Assembly (NCBI RefSeq): GCF_006345805.1
Contig: NC_043011.1
Location: 17,186,464 to 17,250,463 of the forward strand
Reading direction: 5' to 3'
Origin: Octopus sinensis
Lineage: Eukaryota
DNA length: 64,000 nt
The position numbers and the translations under genes were made by a program. Shown here piece by piece: positions 203 through 50,150 of the stretch; position 1 is the first letter of the stretch, and every line of letters starts with the position of its first letter. The notes under the pieces are model-generated. The model saw only the letters and a program-made list of their open reading frames with translations. It made no database searches and had not been told where the DNA came from.

Positions 203-619
203 GGGGAGCTGGCAGAAACGTTAGCACACCGGGTGAAATGCTTAGCGGCATTTCGTCTGCCGATACGTTCTGAGTTCAGATTCCGCCGAGGTCGACTTTA
301 CCTTTCATCCTTTCGGGGTCGATAAATTAAGTACCAGTTACGCACTGGGGTCGATATAATCGACTTAATCCATGTGTTTGTCCTTGTTTATCCTCTCTGT
401 GTTTAGCCCCTTGTGGGTGGTAAAGAAATAGGTATTTCGTCTGCCGCTATGTTCTGAGTTCAAATTCCACCGAGGTCGACTTTGCCTTTCATCCTTTCGG
501 GGTCGATTAAATAAGTACCAGTTACGCACTGGGGTCGATATAATCGACTTAATCTGTGTGTCTGTCCTTGTTTGTCTCCTCTGTGTATAGCCCCATGTGG
601 GTAGTAAAGAAATAGGTAT
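203..619 (+). mobile_element. SINE family A (Deu/Nin-type central domain), head plus 2 tandem 184-bp units
   Basis: Head GAGCTGGCAGAAACGTTAGCAC; GTCGACTTTGCCTTTCATCCTTTCGGGGTCGAT resembles the Deu/Nin SINE domain; unit restarts at 250 and 434. Confidence 0.8.
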
Positions 620-939
620 TCACTGTTTCATCCCACATTCACTACTTTTCCCCCATCAAAAGATTCCATCTATATTTAGCAATCAGCACTTCTTTTTGCA
701 GCTGTCATCACATAACCATACTAATGCAGCATCCTCTCTTTCATTCCACATCAGATTCCTCTTATACCTAATTTTTCTCTCAGCATGTTTGCACTTAGTC
801 ATTGATGCACACTGATGTTGTATATTCAGCAAAGCAATGCTGTCTCCTTTATTTCTAGACTTTGCATGCCCTCTGCATTTATGGCCCATGTTTCAAGACC
901 TGTTGAGGTAAGTGAAAATCAAAATCAAAATCGAAATCG

Positions 940-7026: not shown

Positions 7027-7629
7027 AGGTGGCGAGCTGCAGAATTGTTAGCACGCCAGGCAAGATGCTTAGCGATATTTCGTTTACTGTTACGTTCTGA
7101 GTTCAAATTCCGCCGAGGTCGACTTTGCCTTTCATCCTTTCGGGGTTGATAAATTAAGTACCAGTTATGTATTGGGGTCGATGTAATCGACTTAATCCAT
7201 TTGTCTGTCCTTGTTTGTCCTCTCTGTGTTTAGCCCTTTGTAGGTAGTAAAGAAATAGGTATTTCGTCTGCCGCTACGTTCTGAGTTCAAATTCCACCGA
7301 GGTCGACTTTGCCTTTCATCCTTTTGAGGTCGATTAAATAAGTACCAGTTATGCACTGGGGTCGATATAATCGACTTAATCCGTTTGTGTGTCCTTGTTT
7401 GTGCTCCCTGTGTTTAGCCCCTTGTAGGTAGTAAAGAAATAGGTATTTCGTCTGCCGCTACGTTCTGAGTTCAAATTCTGCCGATATCGACTTTGCCTTT
7501 CATCCTTTCGGGGGTCGATTAAATAAGTACCAATTACGCACTGGGGTCGATATAATCGACTTAATCCGTTTGTCTGTCCTTGTTTGTCCTCTCCGTGTTT
7601 AGCCCCTTGTGGGTAGTAAAGAAATAGAT
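7027..7629 (+). mobile_element. SINE family A with 3 tandem 184-bp units
   Basis: Unit starts at 7077, 7261, 7445. Confidence 0.85.
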
Positions 7630-8844
7630 ATTGTTTTAACTGTATGTCATTTGGATCATACAAAACTTACAACCTTTTATACTGTATATATAAGGCTACA
7701 TGTGTTTGTAAGAAATTGAATAAATAACTTGCTGTCTAGTCGTTACACACTCAGATTTGTAGGGGAATGATTTGCCAAGAATATTAAGGAATTCAAATCT
7801 ACATTTTATATACGAGCAACATAAAAATGTTTTATTGAGAATTTTACTTGTCAGAAACTTTAAACTCTGTCATTACCGAGAAAGAGCACGTTTAGCTGAA
7901 GCGACCGTATAAAGAGGAAATTGGCATAACTAGTTATGATACATCTAACTATATCACAGCAATAATATTGACACAAGTAGAGGTCAGGTTCCACTCGTAA
8001 AACTATCAAGTTTAATGTTACAAGGGTAATATAGTTCTTGATCCAATGTACAGAATACTTCTTCGCTACTGCATCGAGCTGGATTTTATCCAGAAGCATT
8101 ATTTCAATCAATAGATCAATGATATACCAGAATCCTTTTAATGGAACCTATAAGAAAAGCAAACATTTCAATGTGTTGCATGCTTGTTTATGTCTGCTGT
8201 AAGAGAAATTCTCTGACTTTTAGACAATTTCCAATTTTCCATTGATGTTTCTTCGTAATTTTGGTTTTAGAGAAAGAAATTATTCTTTTATTTCTTGTGT
8301 ACACTGATAGTTCAGAGAAATATTTTGAGGATAATTCCCCAGAAACTATAATTTCTTTAAATATATTTATTTCTATATTTGCGACTGTTTGGAAAAGTTC
8401 CTACAATTCCAAGTAGGCTTTTATGGTTAAGATGATTCTTATGATTCAGTGTGTTTATGAAATAGTTTACTTACGTATATGATTATGTGCATGCATGTGT
8501 GTGTGTATTCGGGTATGCATTATTTAAAATTCAGAGATTGCATATTCTCTAGATGCTCATGTCTCTATGTCCAGAATAAATTTGCATGCAGAAGAGGTTT
8601 TGCATGCATCTCTGTAACACATGCTTGAAGAATATTTAATAGGTTGTGACTCTGAGAAGCAAAAAGGTTTGAAGTCATAAAAACCTTGCTCAAAATTGAT
8701 ATACAAGCTTTCCCTGATGTGCTGTGTGAAACTATGTGCCAGATGGAAAAGAATCACAGGATCACAAGTAGTGTGAAGTGACGAGAATTTTCCAAATCCA
8801 CGGCAGGTTCCAAAATTAACATAACATTTTTATTCCAAAACTGA

Positions 8845-12059: not shown

Positions 12060-12430
12060 CATCTCAGTCATTAGACTGTGGCCATGTGGCCATGTTAGAG
12101 CACCGCCTTCAATGATTTTAGTGGAACAAATCGCCCCTAAGACTTATTATTTTTTTTTTTTAGTCTAGTTCTTTTTCTGTTAGTATCTTTTGCCAAATTG
12201 CTATGGTATGGGGATGTAAACACACCAACACCAGTTGTCAAGTACTGATAAAGGAGGAGACAAACACAAAGACACACGCACATATGCATATATATATATA
12301 TATATATACACAACAGGCTTCTTTCAATTTCTGTCTACCAAACCCACTCACAAAGTTTTGGTTGGCCCAAGGCTATAGTAAAAGATACTTGCCCTAGGTG
12401 CCATGCAGTGGGACTGAACCTGGGACATTG
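12060..12430 (-). mobile_element. SINE family B
   Basis: Diverged reverse-strand copy. Confidence 0.75.
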
Positions 12431-16269: not shown

Positions 16270-16990
16270 TGAAATAGAAAAGGAGAGGTATTTCGTGTTG
16301 CAAGACTGTGTGAGACTGTGTGAGAGACAATCATGATGTCATAGGAGAGAAATGTGTCTGCATGGATGATGGCTCACTTGCAGGCTGTAAAGAGAGAGGT
16401 TTGGATACGCCATTATGAAAGGTTGCTAAATAAAGAGAATGAATGGGAGAAAGAGAGTCTGCTGAATGCTGACCCAACAGAGGGACCAGCTATCAGAATT
16501 GATAGTACCTTGGTAGATAAAGCAATTAAGGGTATGAAGACAGGGAAAGCCTCCAGCCCATCAGGAATCGCTGCAGAGATGCTCAAAATATCTGGCAGTG
16601 TAGGCTATAGCCTAGTCACCTGTATAGTCCACCAGGTGATACATGAAGGAGTCATACCCAATGACTGGTGTAGCAGCACCATAATCAACTGCTACAAAGG
16701 TAAAGGTGGCACATTAGATACAAAAAATTACAGAGGTATCAAGTTGTTAGATTAGGTAATGAAAGTCACAGAGAGGGTCATAGCCCAACTAATTAAGGAG
16801 GGAGTCAACCTAGATGAGATGCAGTTTGGGTTCATACCAGGTAAAAGCACCACTGATGCTATATTTCTGGTAAGGCAGCTGCAGGAGAAAATACCTAGTC
16901 AAAGATAAACCTCTGTACCTGGCTTTCCCTGATCCTTTATCTGGTTGGCAATGAGGAAACCAGGTATAGATGAATGGTTAGTGAGAGCGT
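16270..16990 (+). mobile_element. RTE LINE reverse-transcriptase fragment
   Basis: KASSPSGIAAEMLK..IPNDWCSSTIINCYKGKG..NYRGIKLL*VMKV..QFGFIPGKSTTDAIFLVRQLQEK. Confidence 0.9.
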
Positions 16991-20748: not shown

Positions 20749-21450
20749 TTTATGGCTGCCCCCACGTTATCAAGTATGGCCATTGCACGAAGCTTAACTG
20801 TTATTGGTGCTGTGATCAAATGTGACTTTTTAGCCCAGCTAAAGATCTACAGTGTCTTGTACAAATTGGCAACTAAAACCTTTACTGATAATAGCCGGCT
20901 GTAGTTGTAACTGGGCTTCATGTACCTTTGCATGTCGTTTAAGTCCTCCTGCCGAATTACACTCTCTTCCACATGCCTGACAGATATGATTAGTATGGTG
21001 TGTTACACCACCACCAGTGGCCAGGTTGTCACTCATCTGCCTTGTTTTATGACTACGAATATGACTCATGAGTCCAGCTTTACTGAGGCAGGGTCTTTCA
21101 CAGACATTGCATGTCAGAATCAAAGGAAGACCCTTCCCTTCTGGAAGTGTAACAGTGATGCCCTTCCTGATATCCCTCCTTACTTTCTCATGTGCAACTC
21201 GAGATTTCTCAAATGTGGCTGTCCCCTCATTCACAATCCTTCTCCACCTGCTACGATCAATAGCTATGCCTTCCCATGTGTCAGGAGAGATGCAAGCATC
21301 TCTTAAGGAAGCCTTCAGCAAGTCCTTATACCTCTTTTTTGGTTTATGTGGAGGTCGTTCTCCTTTAGCTAACTCTCCATAAAAGAGTTGTTTTGGCATC
21401 CTTGAATCCTTCATTCTGACCAGATGACCACTCCATCTGAGCCTTTGCTC
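20749..21450 (-). mobile_element. RTE (BovB-like) LINE 3' end with C-terminal C2H2 zinc fingers
   Basis: QRLRWSGHLVRM..PKQLFYGEL..RYKDLLK..DRSRWR; CNVCERPCLSKAGLMSHIRSH and CQACGRECNSAGGLKRHAKVH; (TGTA)n after the 3' end. Confidence 0.9.
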
Positions 21451-22484
21451 ATACATACATACATACATACATACATACATACATACAAACATACATACAT
21501 ACATGTGTACACACAATCAAACATACATACATTCATGTGCACACACAATCAAATTTTTATATATAATAATAAATGCAAATATGACACATACAAAAGAATC
21601 CAAGATGATGTTATTTAAGACTGAAATATAAGCTCTATCACTTTCTTTGGAAAATGTATAAAATAACTGATTAAAATAAGAGAAAGTAAAATTTTCACAT
21701 TTTCACCATTCTGTTTATCAAAATAAAAATCTAAATTAGAAATCTTTGCATATCAATTTTCCTGGATGTTGATATAGCGAAATTTGACAGATGAATAACA
21801 GATTTTGTATTGAAATTCTAGTGAGTTTACAATAGATACACATTTACAAAACAACGTATATTTGATGGTAAAGATTAAAAAGAATGAAAGGAAGACAAAG
21901 ATTGCTGAAGAAAAATGGGGAAGGAAAGGAAAGGAAGGAAATAATATAGATAATATTTGCAGAAGCAAATAAATGATGTCTAGTTATTCAGTAGGAATGG
22001 AAGAAAAACCTTCCCTTGGGGGATAATAAGAATATGGATATAGTTTTCATATTTGTATTGAGCTTGATTTGTGATAATGTAAACTTCGATGATAATCAAA
22101 AAGTTTTGTTCGGTTTTAACAACAAATAAGATCCTTTTTTTTTTCCCTGTTATTTATTTGGCTGTTACTGGTTTTTGATATTGGACTGAGGCCATGCTGG
22201 AGCGCTACCTTCAACGGCATTTTTCAATCATATTTATCTCATACTTGCATCAATAAATGTTCTCCATTTACTGAATATTGAGATAATTTAACAGCTACCG
22301 TTTTGTATAAAGTGATGCAACTCAATGCACCATTTTTTTCCTAAACACAAGAATGAACATCTACACACACTATGCAAGGGATATCTACTCACATACACAC
22401 AGTTACATACCTATATATGGTGAGCTTCTACAGCATATCCATCAAGCAAATTTCTTTTACATCACAAAATATCAGTGAACATAA

Positions 22485-33799: not shown

Positions 33800-34165
33800 T
33801 CTTTTACTCTTTTACTTGTTTCAGTCATTTGGCTGTGGCCATGCTGGAACACTGCCTTTAGTCGAGCAAATCGACCCCGGGACTTATTCTATCGCTCTCT
33901 TTTGCTGAACCGCTAAGTAACGGGGACATAAACACACCAACATCGGTTGTCAAGCAATGCTGGGGGAACAAACACAGACACACAAACATACACACATATA
34001 TACATATACACGACGGGCTTCATTCAGTTTCCGTCTACCAAATCCACTCACAATGCTTTGGTCAGCCCGAGGCTATAGTAGAAGACACTTGCCCAAGATG
34101 CCATGCAGTGGGATTGAACTCGGAACCATGTGGTTGGTAAGCAAGCTACTTACCACACAGCCTGA
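33800..34165 (-). mobile_element. SINE family B
   Basis: Reverse-strand copy. Confidence 0.85.
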
Positions 34166-34561: not shown

Positions 34562-34635
<74 letters not shown>

Positions 34636-34637
<2 letters not shown>

Positions 34638-34843
34638 ATGTTGATTCGTTAGCTACTGCACGCATTTTTTTTCTCTCCTTCTTTCTGTGTTTTTCTCTCT
34701 CTGTGTATCTTTCTGTTGAAGAGCGTAGGCTCGAAACGTTAAAGACTTGTTTTATTTATATTTCCTGAGCGCCATACTAATACAATTGTTCGTTTGTTTT
34801 CCACCTGCCTTCGTCTTTTGTTTATTTTCATAAAGCTTCCCGT
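34636..34843 (+). mobile_element. Short PLE-like 3' tail fragment between (TA)n tracts
   Basis: T-rich, CpG-retaining, contains a hammerhead-like motif, ends in (TA)n. Confidence 0.5.
34708..34745 (+). ncRNA. Minimal hammerhead-like motif (variant core)
   Basis: UCUUU-CUGUUGA-A-GAGC(GUAG)GCUC-GAAA-CG-UU-AAAGA; stems I and II pair; core A6 replaced by U. Confidence 0.5.
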
Positions 34844-35044
34844 TATATATATATATATAATTGTAAAAAATGAAGTTCGAAAATGCTGCTGTATTATACA
34901 ATTTTTAATTTTTATATATACATTATAACATGTTTCAGTTCCTGAAATGAACCTTATCAAAAAAAGTTATATATAAAAAAGACAGCTCATGCCGTCAAAC
35001 ACAAGAAATTCATTTATAATACACAACGGAGTCAGACATCTTAG

Positions 35045-35136
35045 AGTTCATGTATAGTTGATATATAGTTCATGTATAGTTGATATATAGTTCATGTATA
35101 GTTGATATATAGTTCATGTATAGTTGATATATAGTT
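35045..35136. repeat. 22-bp tandem repeat x4 (x2 in the right arm, ~37487-37534)
   Basis: AGTTCATGTATAGTTGATATAT starts at 35045, 35067, 35089, 35111. Confidence 0.9.
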
Positions 35137-35268
35137 TGAAGTATATGTTCAAAGTGTTCGATGCAGTGGCCCACGGTGGCGATACGTATTCAATACAAAA
35201 AACAGATCAAAGTGGTGGAAAGCGGTCAATACAGAAGATTGATGTTTCCGAAAGAGCGAGGAATTCAT

Positions 35269-35352
35269 TTTTACCTTAAGCAATTGTGATGACCCATGGT
35301 GGAAGTTCGCTGGGTGGTTCTAGTGAGTTTTTGTGAAATGCTCGGTTTTATA
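35269..35352 (-). promoter_or_regulatory. Mirror copy of the pLTR core promoter, facing leftward
   Basis: Reverse complement: TATA 35352-35346, Inr A 35324, ATG 35297, donor after 35275. Confidence 0.7.
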
Positions 35353-35978
35353 ATGCCTGTTAGGTGGTCAATCTAGCGTAGCGTGACGTCATCAATGTTT
35401 TGACCAATCGTTTCGTTAGGTGGCTTTAATCAAGTAGAACGGGACGTCATCATTATTTTGACCAATCGCTGCATTATAACTCCCTCTTGTTTGTTTCCTG
35501 TTTTGACCAGTCGCTTCGTTAGTCAAGTAGAACGGGTCGTCATCATTATTTTGACCAATCGCTGCATTATATCTGCCTCTTGTTTGTTTCCTGTTTTGAC
35601 CAGTCGCTTCGTTAGTCAAGCAGAGCGGGACGTCATCCAGATTCTGCCCAATCACGACTTATAGCTACATTAGATCTGCCCCCTGTCTGTACTTGTTAGG
35701 TGACTATTCAAGCAGAAAAGGACGTCATCAATATTCTGACTAATGACTGTCCCCTGTTTGTATCCTGTCCATTCTAGCAGAGCTAGACGTCATCAACTTG
35801 TTGACCAATCAGAATCGGGTCTGACCCTTAGCTGTATCGTATATATCAGGGTCAGATTTGCACGAAAGAATTTTTTTCCTTTTTTACTAAGGCATATTTC
35901 CGTCAGAGTGAGTGTCTGTTTGAAGCAGCGGCCGTGGTGGAACCCCGCTTCTCCCTTTCGGAGGACTTATCTTTTGTT

Positions 35979-36275
35979 TTAGTATTCTTGGCCCAGGGTG
36001 TTTAAACTTGGTCTAAATTTTTTTATGAAATATAGTTCTTTATTTTGGCGTTGTGTGAAGGTTGCGTTGTCACTGAATTTATAGAGCGGGTTAGTTGTAA
36101 ATTTCGGATTTACATTTCCAGCACATCTATCTATGTGTCCGCTGACCGGTATTTTGCGGTAATCAGGGTTTCTAATTTGTGATTTATGCACCGCCATCCT
36201 GTTACGTAAGCTATTTTTTGTATGGCCTATATACTGCCTATTGCAGCCTGCGCATGTTATGACGTAAATTAAGTT
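35979..36275 (-). pseudogene. PLE GIY-YIG endonuclease C-terminal fragment (left arm)
   Basis: NLIYVITCAGCNRQYIGHTKNSLRNRMAVHKSQIRNPDYRKIPVSGHIDRC...RQNKELYFIKKFRPSLN. Confidence 0.9.
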
Positions 36276-36285
36276 TATAAATTAA

Positions 36286-36645
36286 GAATTTATACTGGAA
36301 CAAGGCCACCAGTTCACCATTAGAACAAACTTCACCTGCGCATAAGAAAACTTAATTTACGTCATAACATGCGCAGGCTGCAATAGGCAGTATATAGGCC
36401 ATACAAAAAATAGCTTACGTAACAGGATGGCGGTGCATAAATCACAAATTAGAAACCCTGATTACCGCAAAATACCGGTCAGCGGACACATAGATAGATG
36501 TGCTGGAAATGTAAATCCGAAATTTACAACTAACCCGCTCTATAAATTCAGTGACAACGCAACCTTCACACAACGCCAAAATAAAGAACTATATTTCATA
36601 AAAAAATTTAGACCAAGTTTAAACACCCTGGGCCAGGAATACTAA
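36286..36645 (+). pseudogene. PLE GIY-YIG endonuclease C-terminal fragment (right arm plus spacer)
   Basis: EFILEQGHQFTIRTNFTCA*ENLIYVITCAGCNRQYIGHTKNSLRNRMAVH...HIDRC...KELYFIKKFRPSLN; CxxC between IY and YIG plus two His (PLE CCHH motif); in-frame TAA at 36343-36345. Confidence 0.9.
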
Positions 36646-36814
36646 AACAAAAGATAAGTCCTCCGAAAGGGAGAAGCGGGGTTCCACCACGGCCGCTGCT
36701 TCAAACAGACACTCACTCTGACGGAAATATGCCTTAGTAAAAAAGGAAAAAAATTCTTTCGTGCAAATCTGACCCTGATACATACGATACAGCTGAGGGT
36801 CAGACCCGATTCTG

Positions 36815-37239
36815 ATTGGTCAACAAGTTGATGACGTCTAGCTCTGCTAGAATGGACAGGATACAAACAGGGGACAGTCATTAGTCAGAATATTGATGAC
36901 GTCCTTTTCTGCTTGAATAGTCACCTAACAAGTACAGACAGGGGGCAGATCTAATGTAGCTATAAGTCGTGATTGGGCAGAATCTGGATGACGTCCCGCT
37001 CTGCTTGACTAACGAAGCGACTGGTCAAAACAGGAAACAACAAGAGGCAGATATAATGCAGCGATTGGTCAAAATAATGATGACGTCCCGTTCTACTTGA
37101 CTAACGAAGCGACTGGTCAAAACAGGAAACAAACAAGAGGGAGTTATAATGCAGCGATTGGTCAAAATAATGATGACGTCCCGTTCTACTTGATTAAAGC
37201 CACCTAACGAAACGATTGGTCAAAACATTGATGACGTCA
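36815..37239 (+). promoter_or_regulatory. Enhancer array: 6 x (reverse CCAAT)-N12-CRE
   Basis: ATTGG at 36815, 36972, 37064, 37157, 37215 (ATTAG at 36880), each followed 12 nt later by TGACGTC at 36832, 36897, 36989, 37081, 37174, 37232; mirrored in the left arm. Confidence 0.75.
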
Positions 37240-37270
37240 CGCTACGCTAGATTGACCACCTAACAGGCAT

Positions 37271-37354
37271 TATAAAACCGAGCATTTCACAAAAACTCAC
37301 TAGAACCACCCAGCGAACTTCCACCATGGGTCATCACAATTGCTTAAGGTAAAA
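37271..37354 (+). promoter_or_regulatory. pLTR core promoter and first mini-exon (TATA, Inr, Kozak ATG, splice donor)
   Basis: TATAAAA 37271; TCACT with A at 37299; CCACCATGG (ATG 37326); AG|GTAAAA donor at 37349. Confidence 0.7.
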
Positions 37355-37769
37355 ATGAATTCCTCGCTCTTTCGGAAACATCAATCTTCTGTATTGACCG
37401 CTTTCCACCACTTTGATCTGTTTTTTGTATTGAATACGTATCGCCACCGTGGGCCACTGCATCGAACACTTTGAACATATACTTCAAACTATATATCAAC
37501 TATACATGAACTATATATCAACTATACATGAACTCTAAGATGTCTGACTCCGTTGTGTATTATAAATGAATTTCTTGTGTTTGACGGCATGAGCTGTCTT
37601 TTTTTATATATAACTTTTTTTGATAAGGTTCATTTCAGGAACTGAAACATGTTATAATGTATATAAAAAAAATTAAGAATTGTATAATACAGCAGCATTT
37701 TCGAACTTCATTTTTCACAAATATATACCTACTCGTATACGAGCTAATCCTATTATAAATATATATATA

Positions 37770-38007
37770 TATATATGTATGTATGTGTGTGTATATGTTT
37801 GTGTGTCTGTGTTTGTCCCCCCAATATCACTTGACAACTGATGCTGGTGTGTTTACGTCCCTGTAACTTAGAAGTTTGGCAAAGAGGGCCAATAAAATAA
37901 GTACTAGGGTTACAAAGGATAAGTCCTGAGGTCGATTTGTGCGACTAAAGCTGGTGCTCCAGTGTGGACACAGTCAAATGACTGAAACAAGTAAAAGAGT
38001 AGAGAGT
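37770..38007 (+). mobile_element. SINE family B 3' half
   Basis: Continues the copy that begins at 34397. Confidence 0.85.
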
Positions 38008-49621: not shown

Positions 49622-50150
49622 AAGGCGGTGAGCTGGCAGAAACATTAGCATGTTGAGCGAAATGCGTAGCCGTATTTCGTCTACCACTACGTTCTGAGTT
49701 CAAATTCTGCCAAGGTCGACTTTGCCTTTCATCCTTTTGGGGTCGATTAAATAAGTACCAGTTACGCACTGGGGTCGATATAATCGACTTAATCCCGATG
49801 TCTGTCCTTGTTTGTCTCCTCTGTGTTTAGCTCCTTGTGGGTAGTAAAGAAATAGGTATTTCGCCCACCGCTACATTTCTGCTGAGGTCGACTTTGCCTT
49901 TCATCCTTTCGGGGTCGATTAAATAAGTGCCAGTTACACACTGGGGTCGATATAATCGATTTAATCCGTTTGCCTGTCCTTTTTTGTACCCTCTGTGTTT
50001 AACCCCTTGTGGGTAGTAAAGAAATAGATATTTTGTCTGCTGCTATGTCCTGAGTTCAAATTCCGTTGAGGTTGGCTTTGCCTTTCATCCTTCGAGGTCA
50101 ATAAATTAAATACCAGTTGAGTACTGGGGTCAATGTAATCAACTTGCCCC
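49622..50150 (+). mobile_element. SINE family A with ~3 tandem units
   Basis: Units restart at ~49674, 49857 and 50028; the third has the alternative tail. Confidence 0.8.

What the first reader, a model, noticed from the sequence alone, without database searches (positions are those of the whole stretch)
36815..37239. Six CCAAT-CRE modules with invariant 12-nt spacing
Seen: ATTGG-N12-TGACGTC six times (one ATTAG), at periods of 65, 92, 92, 93 and 58 bp. The spacing is fixed although flanks diverge, and the last module has a full TGACGTCA. Established: these are NF-Y and CREB/ATF sites. Inference: a selected composite enhancer making the element cAMP, stress or neuronal-activity responsive, present twice at this locus.
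Basis: partly seen in the sequence, partly recalled or inferred. Interest (0 to 1): 0.75.

Follow-up and report, generated by a model that had tools for sequence, protein, structure and literature searches.

The report
Tandem promoter repeats of a Penelope-like retrotransposon
The six CCAAT/CRE-like modules are real, but they are the units of a tandem repeat in the non-coding end of a young, broken Penelope-like retrotransposon inserted as two back-to-back copies in an octopus-type genome. They are most likely the element's own upstream promoter, and nothing shows them to be a host enhancer for neuronal or cAMP signalling.

Summary
ATTGG-N12-TGACGTC occurs six times at 36815-37238 (+) and six times mirrored at 35385-35809 (-), against 0.19 expected by chance.

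The two sets are the arms of a 1.4-kb palindrome (34854-36276 / 36348-37727; 8 substitutions, 4 indels). Each arm is a 5'-truncated Penelope-like element (PLE). It reads: GIY-YIG endonuclease tail, stop codon, 170 nt, module array, TATAAAA 31 nt after the last (full) TGACGTCA, a minimal hammerhead ribozyme, then the element's end in a (TA)n microsatellite.

The modules are units of a 46/93-bp tandem repeat in the PLE pseudo-LTR. Across units, GATGACGTC is invariant and ATTGG is 93% identical, while the flanks are 38-57% identical (P = 0.0006). There is no RNA structure.

Eight related PLE loci lack the N12 composite. Their pseudo-LTRs are nevertheless strongly enriched in ACGT-core sites (18 observed, 2.4 expected), and one carries CCAATGACGTCA.

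Best reading: this is the element's Pol II upstream promoter/enhancer, built from NF-Y-type and bZIP-type sites, analogous to tandem enhancer repeats in other retroelements. cAMP, stress or neuronal inducibility and any host function are untested. Both copies are dead, and one module has already mutated.

Interest is modest: a new member of a known kind.

The parts
34843..34853 (.). Left flanking (TA)n microsatellite, the target site of the insertion
   Evidence: Sequence read. The boundary with the element is ambiguous by a few TA units.
34854..36276 (-). Left arm: an inverted, 5'-truncated PLE copy that mirrors the right arm
   Evidence: It aligns to 36348-37727 with 8 substitutions and 4 indels, including 44 nt (two extra 22-nt repeat units).
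34927..34960 (-). Minimal hammerhead ribozyme motif of the left copy
35346..35352 (-). TATAAAA of the left copy, reading leftwards
   Evidence: mirror of 37271-37277.
35385..35809 (-). Mirror array of six modules. The module at 35536-35559 has TGACGAC, a substitution at 35537 that arose after insertion.
36277..37727 (+). Right arm: a 5'-truncated PLE copy. Its first 71 nt (36277-36347) form the 'spacer' of the palindrome and are still endonuclease coding sequence.
   Evidence: The spacer translates to EFILEQGHQFTIRTNFTCA and aligns to P0001 ELRLEQGQRFTIRTDFTCA.
36286..36645 (+). Remnant of the C-terminal GIY-YIG endonuclease ORF. It has an in-frame TAA at 36343-36345 and its natural stop at 36643-36645.
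   Evidence: Pfam PF01541, E = 1.4e-7. It is 66% identical to P0001, and relatives carry RVT_1 immediately upstream. Two Cys residues lie inside the GIY...YIG core (LIYVITCAGCNRQYIG), as in PLEs (PMC8557442).
36815..37239 (+). The finding itself: six ATTGG-N12-TGACGTC modules, with starts at 36815, 36880, 36972, 37064, 37157 and 37215
37017..37030 (+). Degenerate half-module GCGACTGGTCAAAA (no CRE); a second one lies at 37109-37122. They show that the 93-bp unit is a dimer of an ~46-bp unit.
   Evidence: (period 45).
37271..37277 (+). TATAAAA, 31 nt downstream of the last module's TGACGTCA. The predicted transcription start is around 37296-37306.
   Evidence: The start-site position is an inference.
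37326..37352 (+). ATG in the context CCACCATGG, an 8-codon reading frame, and a splice-donor-like AAG|GTAAAA at 37349. Its function is uncertain.
   Evidence: The parallel to the 5'-UTR intron of Penelope (PMC2377424, PMC8557442) is an inference only.
37478..37534 (+). 22-nt tandem repeat: 2.2 copies here and 4.2 copies in the left arm (35045-35136)
37620..37653 (+). Minimal type-I hammerhead ribozyme motif: UUGAUAA / GGUUC-loop-GAACU / GAAA-CAUG-U-U, the U3-A8 core variant
   Evidence: The descriptor hits only the two arms in 64 kb (0.085 expected). Nine relatives share the architecture, with compensatory changes in helices I and II and at the 3-8 pair.
37728..37760 (+). A 33-nt segment present at the right end only, containing the palindrome CTCGTATACGAG. 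It is a candidate PLE 'tail'.
   Evidence: The tail concept comes from PMC8557442 and PMC11167929. The assignment is inconclusive.
37761..37776 (.). Right flanking (AT)n microsatellite

Best explanation
The array is the tandemly repeated upstream promoter/enhancer of a Penelope-like retrotransposon (PLE). It lies in the element's pseudo-LTR, the non-coding stretch between the endonuclease stop codon and the hammerhead/ORF-start region of the next tandem copy.

Shown: each ~46/93-bp unit carries an inverted CCAAT box and a CRE-type ACGT-core site 12 nt away. The last unit, with a full TGACGTCA, sits 31 nt upstream of a TATAAAA.

Inferred: in a functional partial-tandem copy, an NF-Y-type factor on the CCAAT boxes and bZIP dimers of the CREB/ATF class on the CRE-like sites would act together over several units. 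They would recruit Pol II to a start site about 30 nt past the TATA box. The transcript would run through the 5' leader and the hammerhead into the downstream ORF.

At this locus the element was inserted into a (TA)n microsatellite as two 5'-truncated copies joined 5'-to-5', a known PLE insertion outcome. The array is therefore present twice in mirror image. Both putative promoters point outwards into flanking DNA, and neither drives an intact ORF.

The fixed 12-nt spacing is inherited by duplication of the unit and kept because the whole 24-nt core tolerates no indels. It is not a constraint shared with other PLE families.
For: 1. Element identity. The arm encodes a GIY-YIG domain that is 35-66% identical to endonuclease domains lying directly after RVT_1 domains in other contigs. 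A minimal hammerhead lies 975 nt after the stop codon and about 85-105 nt before the element's end, the same geometry as in relatives (L003: 98 nt to its (AT)n) and in the Anolis PLE (PMC11167929). The 5' truncation, inverted twin copies and (TA)n target also fit (PMC8557442).

2. Promoter context. TATAAAA lies 31 nt after the last module. PLE transcription is known to start in the pseudo-LTR (PMC2377424, PMC8557442, PMC11167929).

3. Motif-specific conservation among units. GATGACGTC is invariant in 6 of 6 units, ATTGG is 93% identical, and the flanks are 38-57% identical; the run of 9 invariant columns has P = 0.0006. Four of six units also fit the extended NF-Y consensus YSATTGGYYR (read; the consensus is from memory of Mantovani 1998).

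4. Recurrence in relatives. ACGT-core sites are roughly ten-fold enriched in the stop-to-hammerhead interval of six related families (18 observed, 2.4 expected, P < 0.0005). Examples are CCAATGACGTCA in L003 and TGACGTTACGTTACC in L002/L007.

5. No RNA-structure signal. RNAalifold finds only a 4-bp stem at -2 kcal/mol with no covariation, and Rfam reports nothing.

6. In the Anolis PLE the upstream pseudo-LTR is dispensable for reverse transcription in vitro (PMC11167929), which leaves transcription as its likely role.
Against: There are no expression, start-site, chromatin or binding data, so the promoter function is an inference.

No other copy of this exact family could be retrieved. Selection therefore cannot be tested across copies, and both arms derive from a single insertion event.

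The one experimentally dissected PLE promoter (D. virilis Penelope) is TATA-less and internal (PMC2377424), so this architecture is not the documented PLE norm.

Unit 2 has ATTAG and unit 3 has a poor flank, so at most 4-5 of the 6 CCAAT boxes are good NF-Y sites. Five of the six CREs are 7/8 variants.

The conserved block extends beyond the two motifs (TCTGCTTGA), so other or different factors may be involved.

The ATG and donor site after the TATA box lead to no ORF in this copy.
Confidence: 0.6

Rival explanations
1. Neutral minisatellite. The array is just a tandem duplication in the PLE non-coding region, and its resemblance to CCAAT and CRE sites is fortuitous. Apparent conservation reflects recent duplication or gene conversion among units.
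For: The units are plainly a tandem repeat, and u4 and u5 are nearly identical. The spacer is also fairly conserved at 73%. The same arm holds another unstable repeat (22-nt units, 2.2 versus 4.2 copies). The N12 composite is absent from relatives.
Against: Conservation is concentrated on the two motifs even between the oldest units, which are only 38-57% identical in their flanks (P = 0.0006). The last unit abuts a TATA box. ACGT-core sites recur at the equivalent place in six other PLE families.
Confidence: 0.2
2. RNA-level element. The repeated UGAUGA/ACGU-containing units act in the transcript, for example as a ribozyme core, a C/D-box-like motif, or binding sites for the PLE protein during RNP assembly or reverse transcription.
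For: The units contain UGAUGA, which resembles the hammerhead CUGAUGA box and the C box. There is a weak Rfam hit to snoRNA sR4 (19.6 bits, gathering threshold 50). The region is transcribed as the 3' UTR of an upstream tandem copy.
Against: No unit has C at position 3, a helix II or a GAAA box. The real hammerhead lies 380 nt downstream. RNAalifold finds only a 4-bp invariant stem. In the Anolis PLE the RNA needed for reverse transcription lies in the first 172 nt of the ORF, not in the upstream pseudo-LTR (PMC11167929).
Confidence: 0.07
3. Host-exapted inducible enhancer. The two arrays have been co-opted at this locus to make a neighbouring host gene responsive to cAMP, stress or neuronal activity.
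For: The outward-facing TATA-linked arrays could in principle drive flanking transcription. A CRE close to a TATA box is the configuration associated with cAMP inducibility (from memory, Conkright et al. 2003).
Against: The insertion is very young: the arms differ by 0.6%, and CpG observed/expected is 0.92-0.95 against 0.43 for the rest of the window. One module has already been hit by a substitution. The flanks are microsatellite and SINE-like repeats with no nearby ORF. No data on expression or population frequency are available.
Confidence: 0.05
4. Assembly artefact. The mirror copy of the array is a fold-back chimera from long-read sequencing, so only one array really exists.
For: The palindrome is near-perfect, with 693-nt and 499-nt blocks reported as 100% identical. 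Complex PLE insertions are known to trouble assemblies (PMC8557442).
Against: The arms differ by 8 substitutions, three 1-nt indels and two 22-nt repeat units. The centre is asymmetric: 71 nt of extra coding sequence belong to the right copy only. A 33-nt segment is present at one end only. Inverted 5'-truncated twin copies are a documented PLE insertion product (PMC8557442, PMC2377424).
Confidence: 0.05

Closest known systems
Pseudo-LTR promoter of Penelope-like elements (D. virilis Penelope; Chlamys-3_cRei; Anolis Poseidon PAc)
   Same: Located between the endonuclease stop codon and the hammerhead/ORF start. Transcription of PLEs starts in the pseudo-LTR of an upstream partial copy. Shares the hammerhead motif, the partial-tandem or inverted copy structure, and insertion into AT-rich or (TA)n DNA (PMC2377424, PMC8557442, PMC11167929).
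   Different: The dissected Penelope promoter is TATA-less and internal, with a downstream RGACGTGY element. Here there is a TATA box preceded by a six-unit tandem array of CCAAT/CRE-like modules, and the pseudo-LTR is expanded to about 975 nt against 60-460 nt in the relatives examined.
Tandem enhancer repeats of other retroelement promoters: ERV-9/LTR12 U3 repeats bound by NF-Y, mouse LINE-1 5' monomers, and the CRE-like 21-bp repeats of deltaretrovirus LTRs
   Same: Short units carrying transcription-factor sites, repeated in tandem directly upstream of the element's start site. [quoted passage not shown]
   Different: A different element class (PLE), a different host phylum, and a different unit sequence and partner motif (a CRE-type site rather than GATA/MZF1). 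No binding or activity data exist here.
NF-Y composite elements with stereo-positioned partners: E-box or TRE 10-12 bp 5' of CCAAT, and ERSE (CCAAT-N9-CCACG) / ERSE-II (ATTGG-N-CCACG)
   Same: A CCAAT box with a bZIP/bHLH ACGT-type site at a fixed short distance. Read on the CCAAT strand, the bZIP site lies 5' of CCAAT, as for the human stereo-positioned partners (PMC7793273, PMC3730095). The relative orientation ATTGG-then-ACG-core matches ERSE-II.
   Different: The spacing and partner motif differ: N12 to TGACGTC, against N9 or N1 to CCACG, and against an E-box starting at -12/-11. The ERSE definitions are from memory. Membership is not met.
Minimal hammerhead ribozymes of PLEs (Cervera and De la Pena 2014)
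   Same: The arm carries one at 37620-37653, with a 4-nt palindromic helix-III surrogate (CAUG) and the U3-A8 core covariation described for Cercyon PLEs (PMC4209133).
   Different: It is not the finding. The six modules are not hammerheads: they lack C3, helix II and GAAA. Relatives also show an A3-U8 core pair, which is not mentioned in the parts of that paper I read (about half of its text).

Membership tests
Canonical (C-terminal EN+) Penelope-like element | [quoted passage not shown] | tested here: met
   PF01541, E = 1.4e-7. LIYVITCAGCNRQYIG is read, and the ORF ends 36643-36645.
Canonical (C-terminal EN+) Penelope-like element | Telomerase-like reverse transcriptase upstream of the endonuclease in the same ORF | tested here: inconclusive
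   Absent from the window because both copies are 5'-truncated within the endonuclease domain. Relatives at 50-55% endonuclease identity have RVT_1 directly upstream (L002, L005), and the more distant L003 locus (35% endonuclease identity) has an RVT_1 ORF about 2.3 kb upstream.
Canonical (C-terminal EN+) Penelope-like element | Hammerhead ribozyme motif in the pseudo-LTR | tested here: met
   Minimal hammerhead at 37620-37653 and 34927-34960. The descriptor hits only these two sites in 64 kb (0.085 expected). Relatives show compensatory changes in helices I and II and at the 3-8 pair. Rfam hammerhead models do not detect it.
Canonical (C-terminal EN+) Penelope-like element | 5' truncation, tandem or inverted copy structure, an optional 30-40-bp tail, and an AT-rich or microsatellite target | tested here: met
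   Inverted twin 5'-truncated copies and (TA)n on both sides. The 33-nt one-sided segment is only a candidate tail.
NF-Y (CCAAT-box) site | Intact CCAAT pentamer with consensus flanks (YSATTGGYYR on this strand) | tested here: inconclusive
   Five of six units have ATTGG (unit 2 has ATTAG), and 4 of 6 fit the extended consensus. Protein binding is not testable here.
cAMP response element (CREB/ATF site) | TGACGTCA palindrome or a functional half-site, close to a TATA box; inducible by cAMP through CREB | tested here: inconclusive
   The full palindrome is present in 1 of 6 units, 31 nt from TATAAAA, and TGACGTC (7 of 8) in all six. Inducibility and binding are not testable with these tools.
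ER-stress response element (ERSE / ERSE-II) | CCAAT-N9-CCACG or ATTGG-N1-CCACG | tested here: not met
   The modules are ATTGG-N12-TGACGTC, with no CCACG at N9 or N1.
Hammerhead ribozyme, as an explanation of the UGAUGA in each module | CUGANGA box, helix II, GAAA box and a cleavage site | tested here: not met
   The box reads A/U/G-UGAUGA, with no helix II or GAAA following. Rfam reports no hit.
Tandem-repeat enhancer of a retroelement promoter (LTR12-like, L1-monomer-like) | Units with transcription-factor motifs repeated directly upstream of the element's start site; promoter activity scaling with the units | tested here: inconclusive
   The arrangement upstream of a TATA box is met. The start site and activity are not testable here.

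The most novel reading that the evidence does not exclude
A cephalopod PLE family has replaced the TATA-less internal promoter known from Drosophila Penelope with a TATA promoter. That promoter is driven by a six-fold NF-Y/bZIP composite with ERSE-II-like orientation, moved out by one helical turn (N1 to N12). This would make the element's transcription inducible by cAMP/CREB or by ER-stress bZIPs (ATF6, XBP1, CREB3 class). Because PLE insertions are usually 5'-truncated and often inverted, the family would then scatter outward-firing inducible promoters through the octopus genome. The single, nearly identical module found in a non-PLE context in another invertebrate contig (L011, 25/26 nt) would then hint that the composite was captured from, or converges on, a host promoter type.
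Probability: 0.1. Interest if true: 0.55.

Novelty: new member of a known kind. Interest (0 to 1): 0.3.

Why it matters
PLE transcriptional control has been dissected in only one element (D. virilis Penelope), and it is unknown in molluscs. Yet the O. vulgaris repeat annotation lists 31 Penelope-like families, with 336 insertions, in its table of active elements (PMC13282606).

A TATA-linked tandem array of NF-Y/bZIP sites would show that PLEs can evolve LTR-like enhancer repeats. It would also give a concrete, mutable sequence for testing how these elements are switched on.

At the level of this locus the finding is ordinary: a dead, recently inserted transposon fragment whose repeated motifs explain themselves.

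As a by-product, the related loci provide a small comparative set of PLE minimal hammerheads with three alternative Watson-Crick pairs at core positions 3-8.

Tried and rejected
1. Hammerhead, snoRNA or other RNA family for the modules. Rfam at gathering threshold over the whole window found nothing. Rfam at E <= 10 over 34600-38000 gave only sub-threshold miRNA-hairpin hits caused by the palindrome and (TA)n, plus sR4 at 19.6 bits. RNAalifold on the six units found a 4-bp stem only. Rejected.

2. Other copies of the element in the window: none.

3. Other copies of the same family elsewhere. An exact-protein look-up of the window's endonuclease remnant and of the O. bimaculoides fragment P0002 found nothing on record. 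The best protein relative is only 66% identical. A JGI metagenome protein-pattern scan found nothing.

4. The N12 composite in relatives. A scan for ATT[GA]G-N6-20-TGACGT in L001-L005 found none. Later loci L006-L010 also have none by inspection.

5. A DNA-pattern scan of metagenome contigs returned one hit, L011, which is not a PLE: tblastn with the endonuclease proteins is negative and no hammerhead is present. Rough chance expectation is about 0.06, on my assumption of a collection of ~10^12 bases, so it remains an unexplained lead and is not used as evidence.

6. MAFFT alignment of the hammerhead regions was not structural. Pairings were therefore computed directly.

7. Looking for an ORF continuing from the ATG at 37326 through plausible splice acceptors, by reading the sequence: all frames stop, so the ATG and donor were left as uncertain.

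8. The accession prefix of L011 was not found in the literature library.

Full report
**1. The observation**

The pattern ATTGG-N12-TGACGTC (up to 1 mismatch) occurs 12 times in the window, against 0.19 expected; none of 100 shuffles reached 12.

Six copies lie on the + strand at 36815, 36880, 36972, 37064, 37157 and 37215. The second has ATTAG, and the last has the full TGACGTCA at 37232-37239. The periods are 65, 92, 92, 93 and 58 bp, as reported. Six more lie on the - strand at 35385-35809.

Tandem Repeats Finder calls the region a repeat of period 93 with a sub-period of 45. Two degenerate half-modules (GCGACTGGTCAAAA, no CRE) sit between full modules. The repetition and the constant spacing are therefore inherited by duplication of an ~46-bp unit.

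I anchored the six units on ATTGG without gaps and measured pairwise identity:

| Segment | Pairwise identity |
|---|---|
| 5' flank (20 nt) | 38% |
| ATTGG | 93% |
| 12-nt spacer | 73% |
| TGACGTC | 100% |
| Next 26 nt | 57% |

The invariant run GATGACGTC (9 columns) has P = 0.0006 under column permutation. So the two motifs really are the most conserved parts. The spacer and a downstream TCTGCTTGA block are also conserved, so 'flanks diverge' is only partly right.

**2. What surrounds it**

The two arrays are the arms of a large palindrome. Arms 34854-36276 and 36348-37727 align over 1425 columns with 8 substitutions and 4 indels.

Reading the right arm 5' to 3':
- **36286-36645:** the C-terminal part of a GIY-YIG endonuclease ORF (Pfam PF01541, E = 1.4e-7). 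[quoted passage not shown]
- **36643-36645:** the ORF stop codon, followed by 170 nt.
- **36815-37239:** the module array.
- **37271-37277:** TATAAAA.
- **37326:** an ATG in the context CCACCATGG, followed after 8 codons by a donor-like AAG|GTAAAA.
- **37478-37534:** a 22-nt tandem repeat.
- **37620-37653:** a minimal hammerhead motif.
- **About 37727:** the end of the arm homology, then a 33-nt segment found on this side only, then (AT)n. The left arm abuts (TA)n directly.

The 71-nt 'spacer' of the palindrome is further endonuclease coding sequence belonging to the right copy. It aligns to residues 58-79 of relative P0001 and carries an in-frame TAA at 36343-36345.

Several features argue against an assembly fold-back: the arms differ by two 22-nt repeat units, three 1-nt indels and eight substitutions, the centre is asymmetric, and the extra terminal segment is one-sided. 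They fit the documented PLE habit of inserting as 5'-truncated copies with an adjacent inverted copy, often into (TA)n (PMC8557442, PMC2377424).

CpG observed/expected is 0.92-0.95 throughout the element, against 0.43 in the rest of the window. Together with 0.6% arm divergence, this marks a young insertion. The window shares ~80%-identical repeats with an Octopus bimaculoides chromosome segment, so the host is an octopod.

**3. Relatives**

Protein searches with the endonuclease remnant, and then with a three-sequence profile, found 13 proteins. I fetched DNA for nine (L001-L010). RVT_1 domains lie directly upstream of the endonuclease domain in L002 and L005, and about 2.3 kb upstream of it in L003. 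These are canonical PLEs with a C-terminal endonuclease.

*The hammerhead is shared.* All but L009 carry, shortly after the stop codon, a motif with the same architecture as 37620-37653: a 7-nt core, a 3-5-bp helix II, GAAA, a 4-nt palindrome (CAUG or CCGG), then U and H. Compensatory changes are as follows:

| Feature | Variants seen |
|---|---|
| Core pair 3-8 | U-A (window, L001); C-G (L005, L003b, L006); A-U (L002, L007, L008, L010) |
| Helix II | GGUUC/GAACU, ACCA/UGGU, CUGU/ACAG, ACA/UGU, CUUC/GAAG, UCUC/GAGG |
| Helix I | CCCC/GGGG, CCC/GGG, CGCUAA/UUAGCG, 10 bp in L003 |

A descriptor of this architecture hits only the two arms in the 64-kb window (0.085 expected). This matches the minimal PLE hammerheads, including the U3-A8 variant, described in PMC4209133. 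Rfam's hammerhead models miss it.

The distance from hammerhead to element end is about 85-105 nt here and 98 nt in L003. This agrees with the Anolis PLE, where the hammerhead sits at the ORF start and reverse transcription begins 111-118 nt into the ORF (PMC11167929).

The modules therefore lie in the pseudo-LTR, upstream of the hammerhead/ORF-start region. In this family that region is expanded to ~975 nt, against 60-460 nt in relatives.

*The composite is not shared.* None of the relatives has ATTGG within 6-20 nt of TGACGT.

*ACGT-core sites are shared.* The stop-to-hammerhead intervals of six related families are strongly enriched in ACGT-core sites: 18 observed against 2.4 expected from shuffles (P < 0.0005). 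In L002, L005 and L008 the density is about ten times that of the coding parts of the same contigs. Examples:
- CCAATGACGTCA in both copies of L003.
- TGACGTTACGTTACC in L002 and L007.
- TACGTTACGTTACCGTTGACGACGTT in L008, and a closely similar stretch (GTAACGTCGCGTTACCGTTGACGACGTT) in L010.
- ACGTCACGTT, TTACGTCCC and CCACGTGG in L005.

A CRE-like or ACGT-core element near the hammerhead is thus a recurrent trait of this PLE clade. The CCAAT partner at N12 and the six-fold amplification are peculiar to the window's family.

**4. How it most likely works**

PLE transcripts start in the pseudo-LTR of an upstream partial copy (PMC2377424, PMC8557442, PMC11167929). In the Anolis element the upstream pseudo-LTR is not needed for target-primed reverse transcription in vitro (PMC11167929).

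The array sits immediately upstream of a TATA box. Its last and best CRE is 31 nt from that box. Its most conserved positions are exactly two classic Pol II upstream elements. Four of six units also fit the extended NF-Y consensus (read; the consensus is from memory of Mantovani 1998).

I therefore read the array as the element's upstream promoter/enhancer. This part is inference: an NF-Y-type factor and CREB/ATF-class bZIP dimers bind each unit, the units act additively or synergistically, and transcription starts around 37296-37306 and proceeds through the leader and hammerhead into the next ORF of a tandem copy.

NF-Y is known to be stereo-positioned with bZIP and bHLH partners lying 5' of CCAAT, and to occupy tandem CCAAT repeats of LTR12/ERV-9 (PMC7793273, PMC3730095). 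That makes the design familiar. The exact spacing here matches neither the E-box position (-12/-11) nor ERSE/ERSE-II.

At this locus both copies lack an ORF, and the putative promoters face outward. One module in the left arm has already mutated (TGACGTC to TGACGAC at 35537), as expected for neutral decay.

**5. Rivals**

- **Neutral minisatellite.** Weakened by the motif-focused conservation, the TATA context and the recurrence in relatives.
- **RNA-level function.** There is no helix II or GAAA, no covariation, and the real hammerhead is elsewhere.
- **Host-exapted inducible enhancer.** No evidence supports it; the insertion is very young and already decaying.
- **Assembly artefact.** Argued against by the differences between the arms.

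**6. Comparison and novelty**

The closest known things are the PLE pseudo-LTR promoter and the tandem enhancer repeats of other retroelements. The PLE promoter has been dissected only in D. virilis, where it is TATA-less and internal (PMC2377424).

I found no description of a CCAAT/CRE tandem array in a PLE in the papers searched. This is a limited search, not proof of absence. I rate the finding a new member of a known kind, of modest interest. cAMP, stress or neuronal responsiveness remains an untested guess.

**7. Loose end**

A scan of metagenome contigs for ATTGGTCARAAYANTGATGACGTC returned one contig (L011). It carries a single CTGATTGGTCAAAACAATGATGACGTCATCA, which matches unit 6 at 25 of 26 nt. 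The context is not a PLE: a C1q-domain exon lies nearby, and TATA-like boxes sit on both sides. Naive chance expectation is about 0.06, on my assumption of a collection of ~10^12 bases. I treat it as unexplained.

Noticed in passing
window 37620-37653 (+) and 34927-34960 (-); L001 ~1545-1580, L002 ~1722-1750, L005 ~1733-1766, L007 ~1064-1092, L008 979-1010, L010 784-813, L003 ~12318-12342: A minimal type-I hammerhead ribozyme motif of the PLE, missed by the Rfam models. Across relatives the core 3-8 pair is U-A, C-G or A-U, and helices I and II show compensatory changes.
   Followed up: yes
window 34854-37727: A 1.4-kb-arm palindrome, 99.4% identical at aligned bases. If transcribed through, it would form a long hairpin RNA, a possible small-RNA source against this PLE family. 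Its centre gives a spurious sub-threshold Rfam MIR7996 hit (57.8 bits, gathering threshold 119).
   Followed up: partly
L011 3141-3171 (contig JAAUYA010110332.1): A single CTGATTGGTCAAAACAATGATGACGTCATCA, 25/26 nt identical to module 6. It lies in a non-PLE context about 1 kb from a C1q-domain exon, with TATA-like boxes on both sides. It could be chance (~0.06 expected) or a host promoter of the same design.
   Followed up: partly
window 35045-35136 versus 37478-37534: A 22-nt tandem repeat (AGTTCATGTATAGTTGATATAT) with 4.2 copies in the left arm and 2.2 in the right. This is the largest difference between the arms and shows repeat instability since, or during, insertion.
   Followed up: partly
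window 37728-37760: A 33-nt segment present at the right end of the insertion only, containing the perfect 12-nt palindrome CTCGTATACGAG. It is a candidate PLE 'tail' or reverse-transcription start hairpin.
   Followed up: partly
L002 ~1680-1694, L007 ~1013-1027, L008 ~925-950, L010 ~745-770: A conserved ACGT-rich block (TGACGTTACGTTACC / TACGTTACGTTACCGTTGACGACGTT) about 35-55 nt upstream of the hammerhead in a related PLE lineage. It may be that lineage's counterpart of the CRE-like sites.
   Followed up: partly
window 250-620, 7076-7632, 49705-50033: Tandem arrays (2-3 copies) of a 172-184-bp unit containing a tRNA-like B-box (GTTCAAATTCC), presumably an octopod SINE arranged in tandem. Similar SINE-like pieces flank the PLE insertion (33874-34006, 37778-37910).
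   Followed up: no
window 16354-16755 (+) and 20839-21516 (-): Fragments of non-LTR retrotransposon ORFs: a reverse-transcriptase-like N-terminal region and a C-terminal region with C2H2-type zinc-finger motifs. The first is about 80% identical to a stretch of O. bimaculoides (L004 10719-11358).
   Followed up: no
L003 10334-10488 and 11839-12020: A 26-nt tandem repeat (CAGATCAGGGACCCCAATACCAGAAT, 6-7 copies) inserted inside the endonuclease coding region of both tandem PLE copies in this unrelated contig.
   Followed up: no
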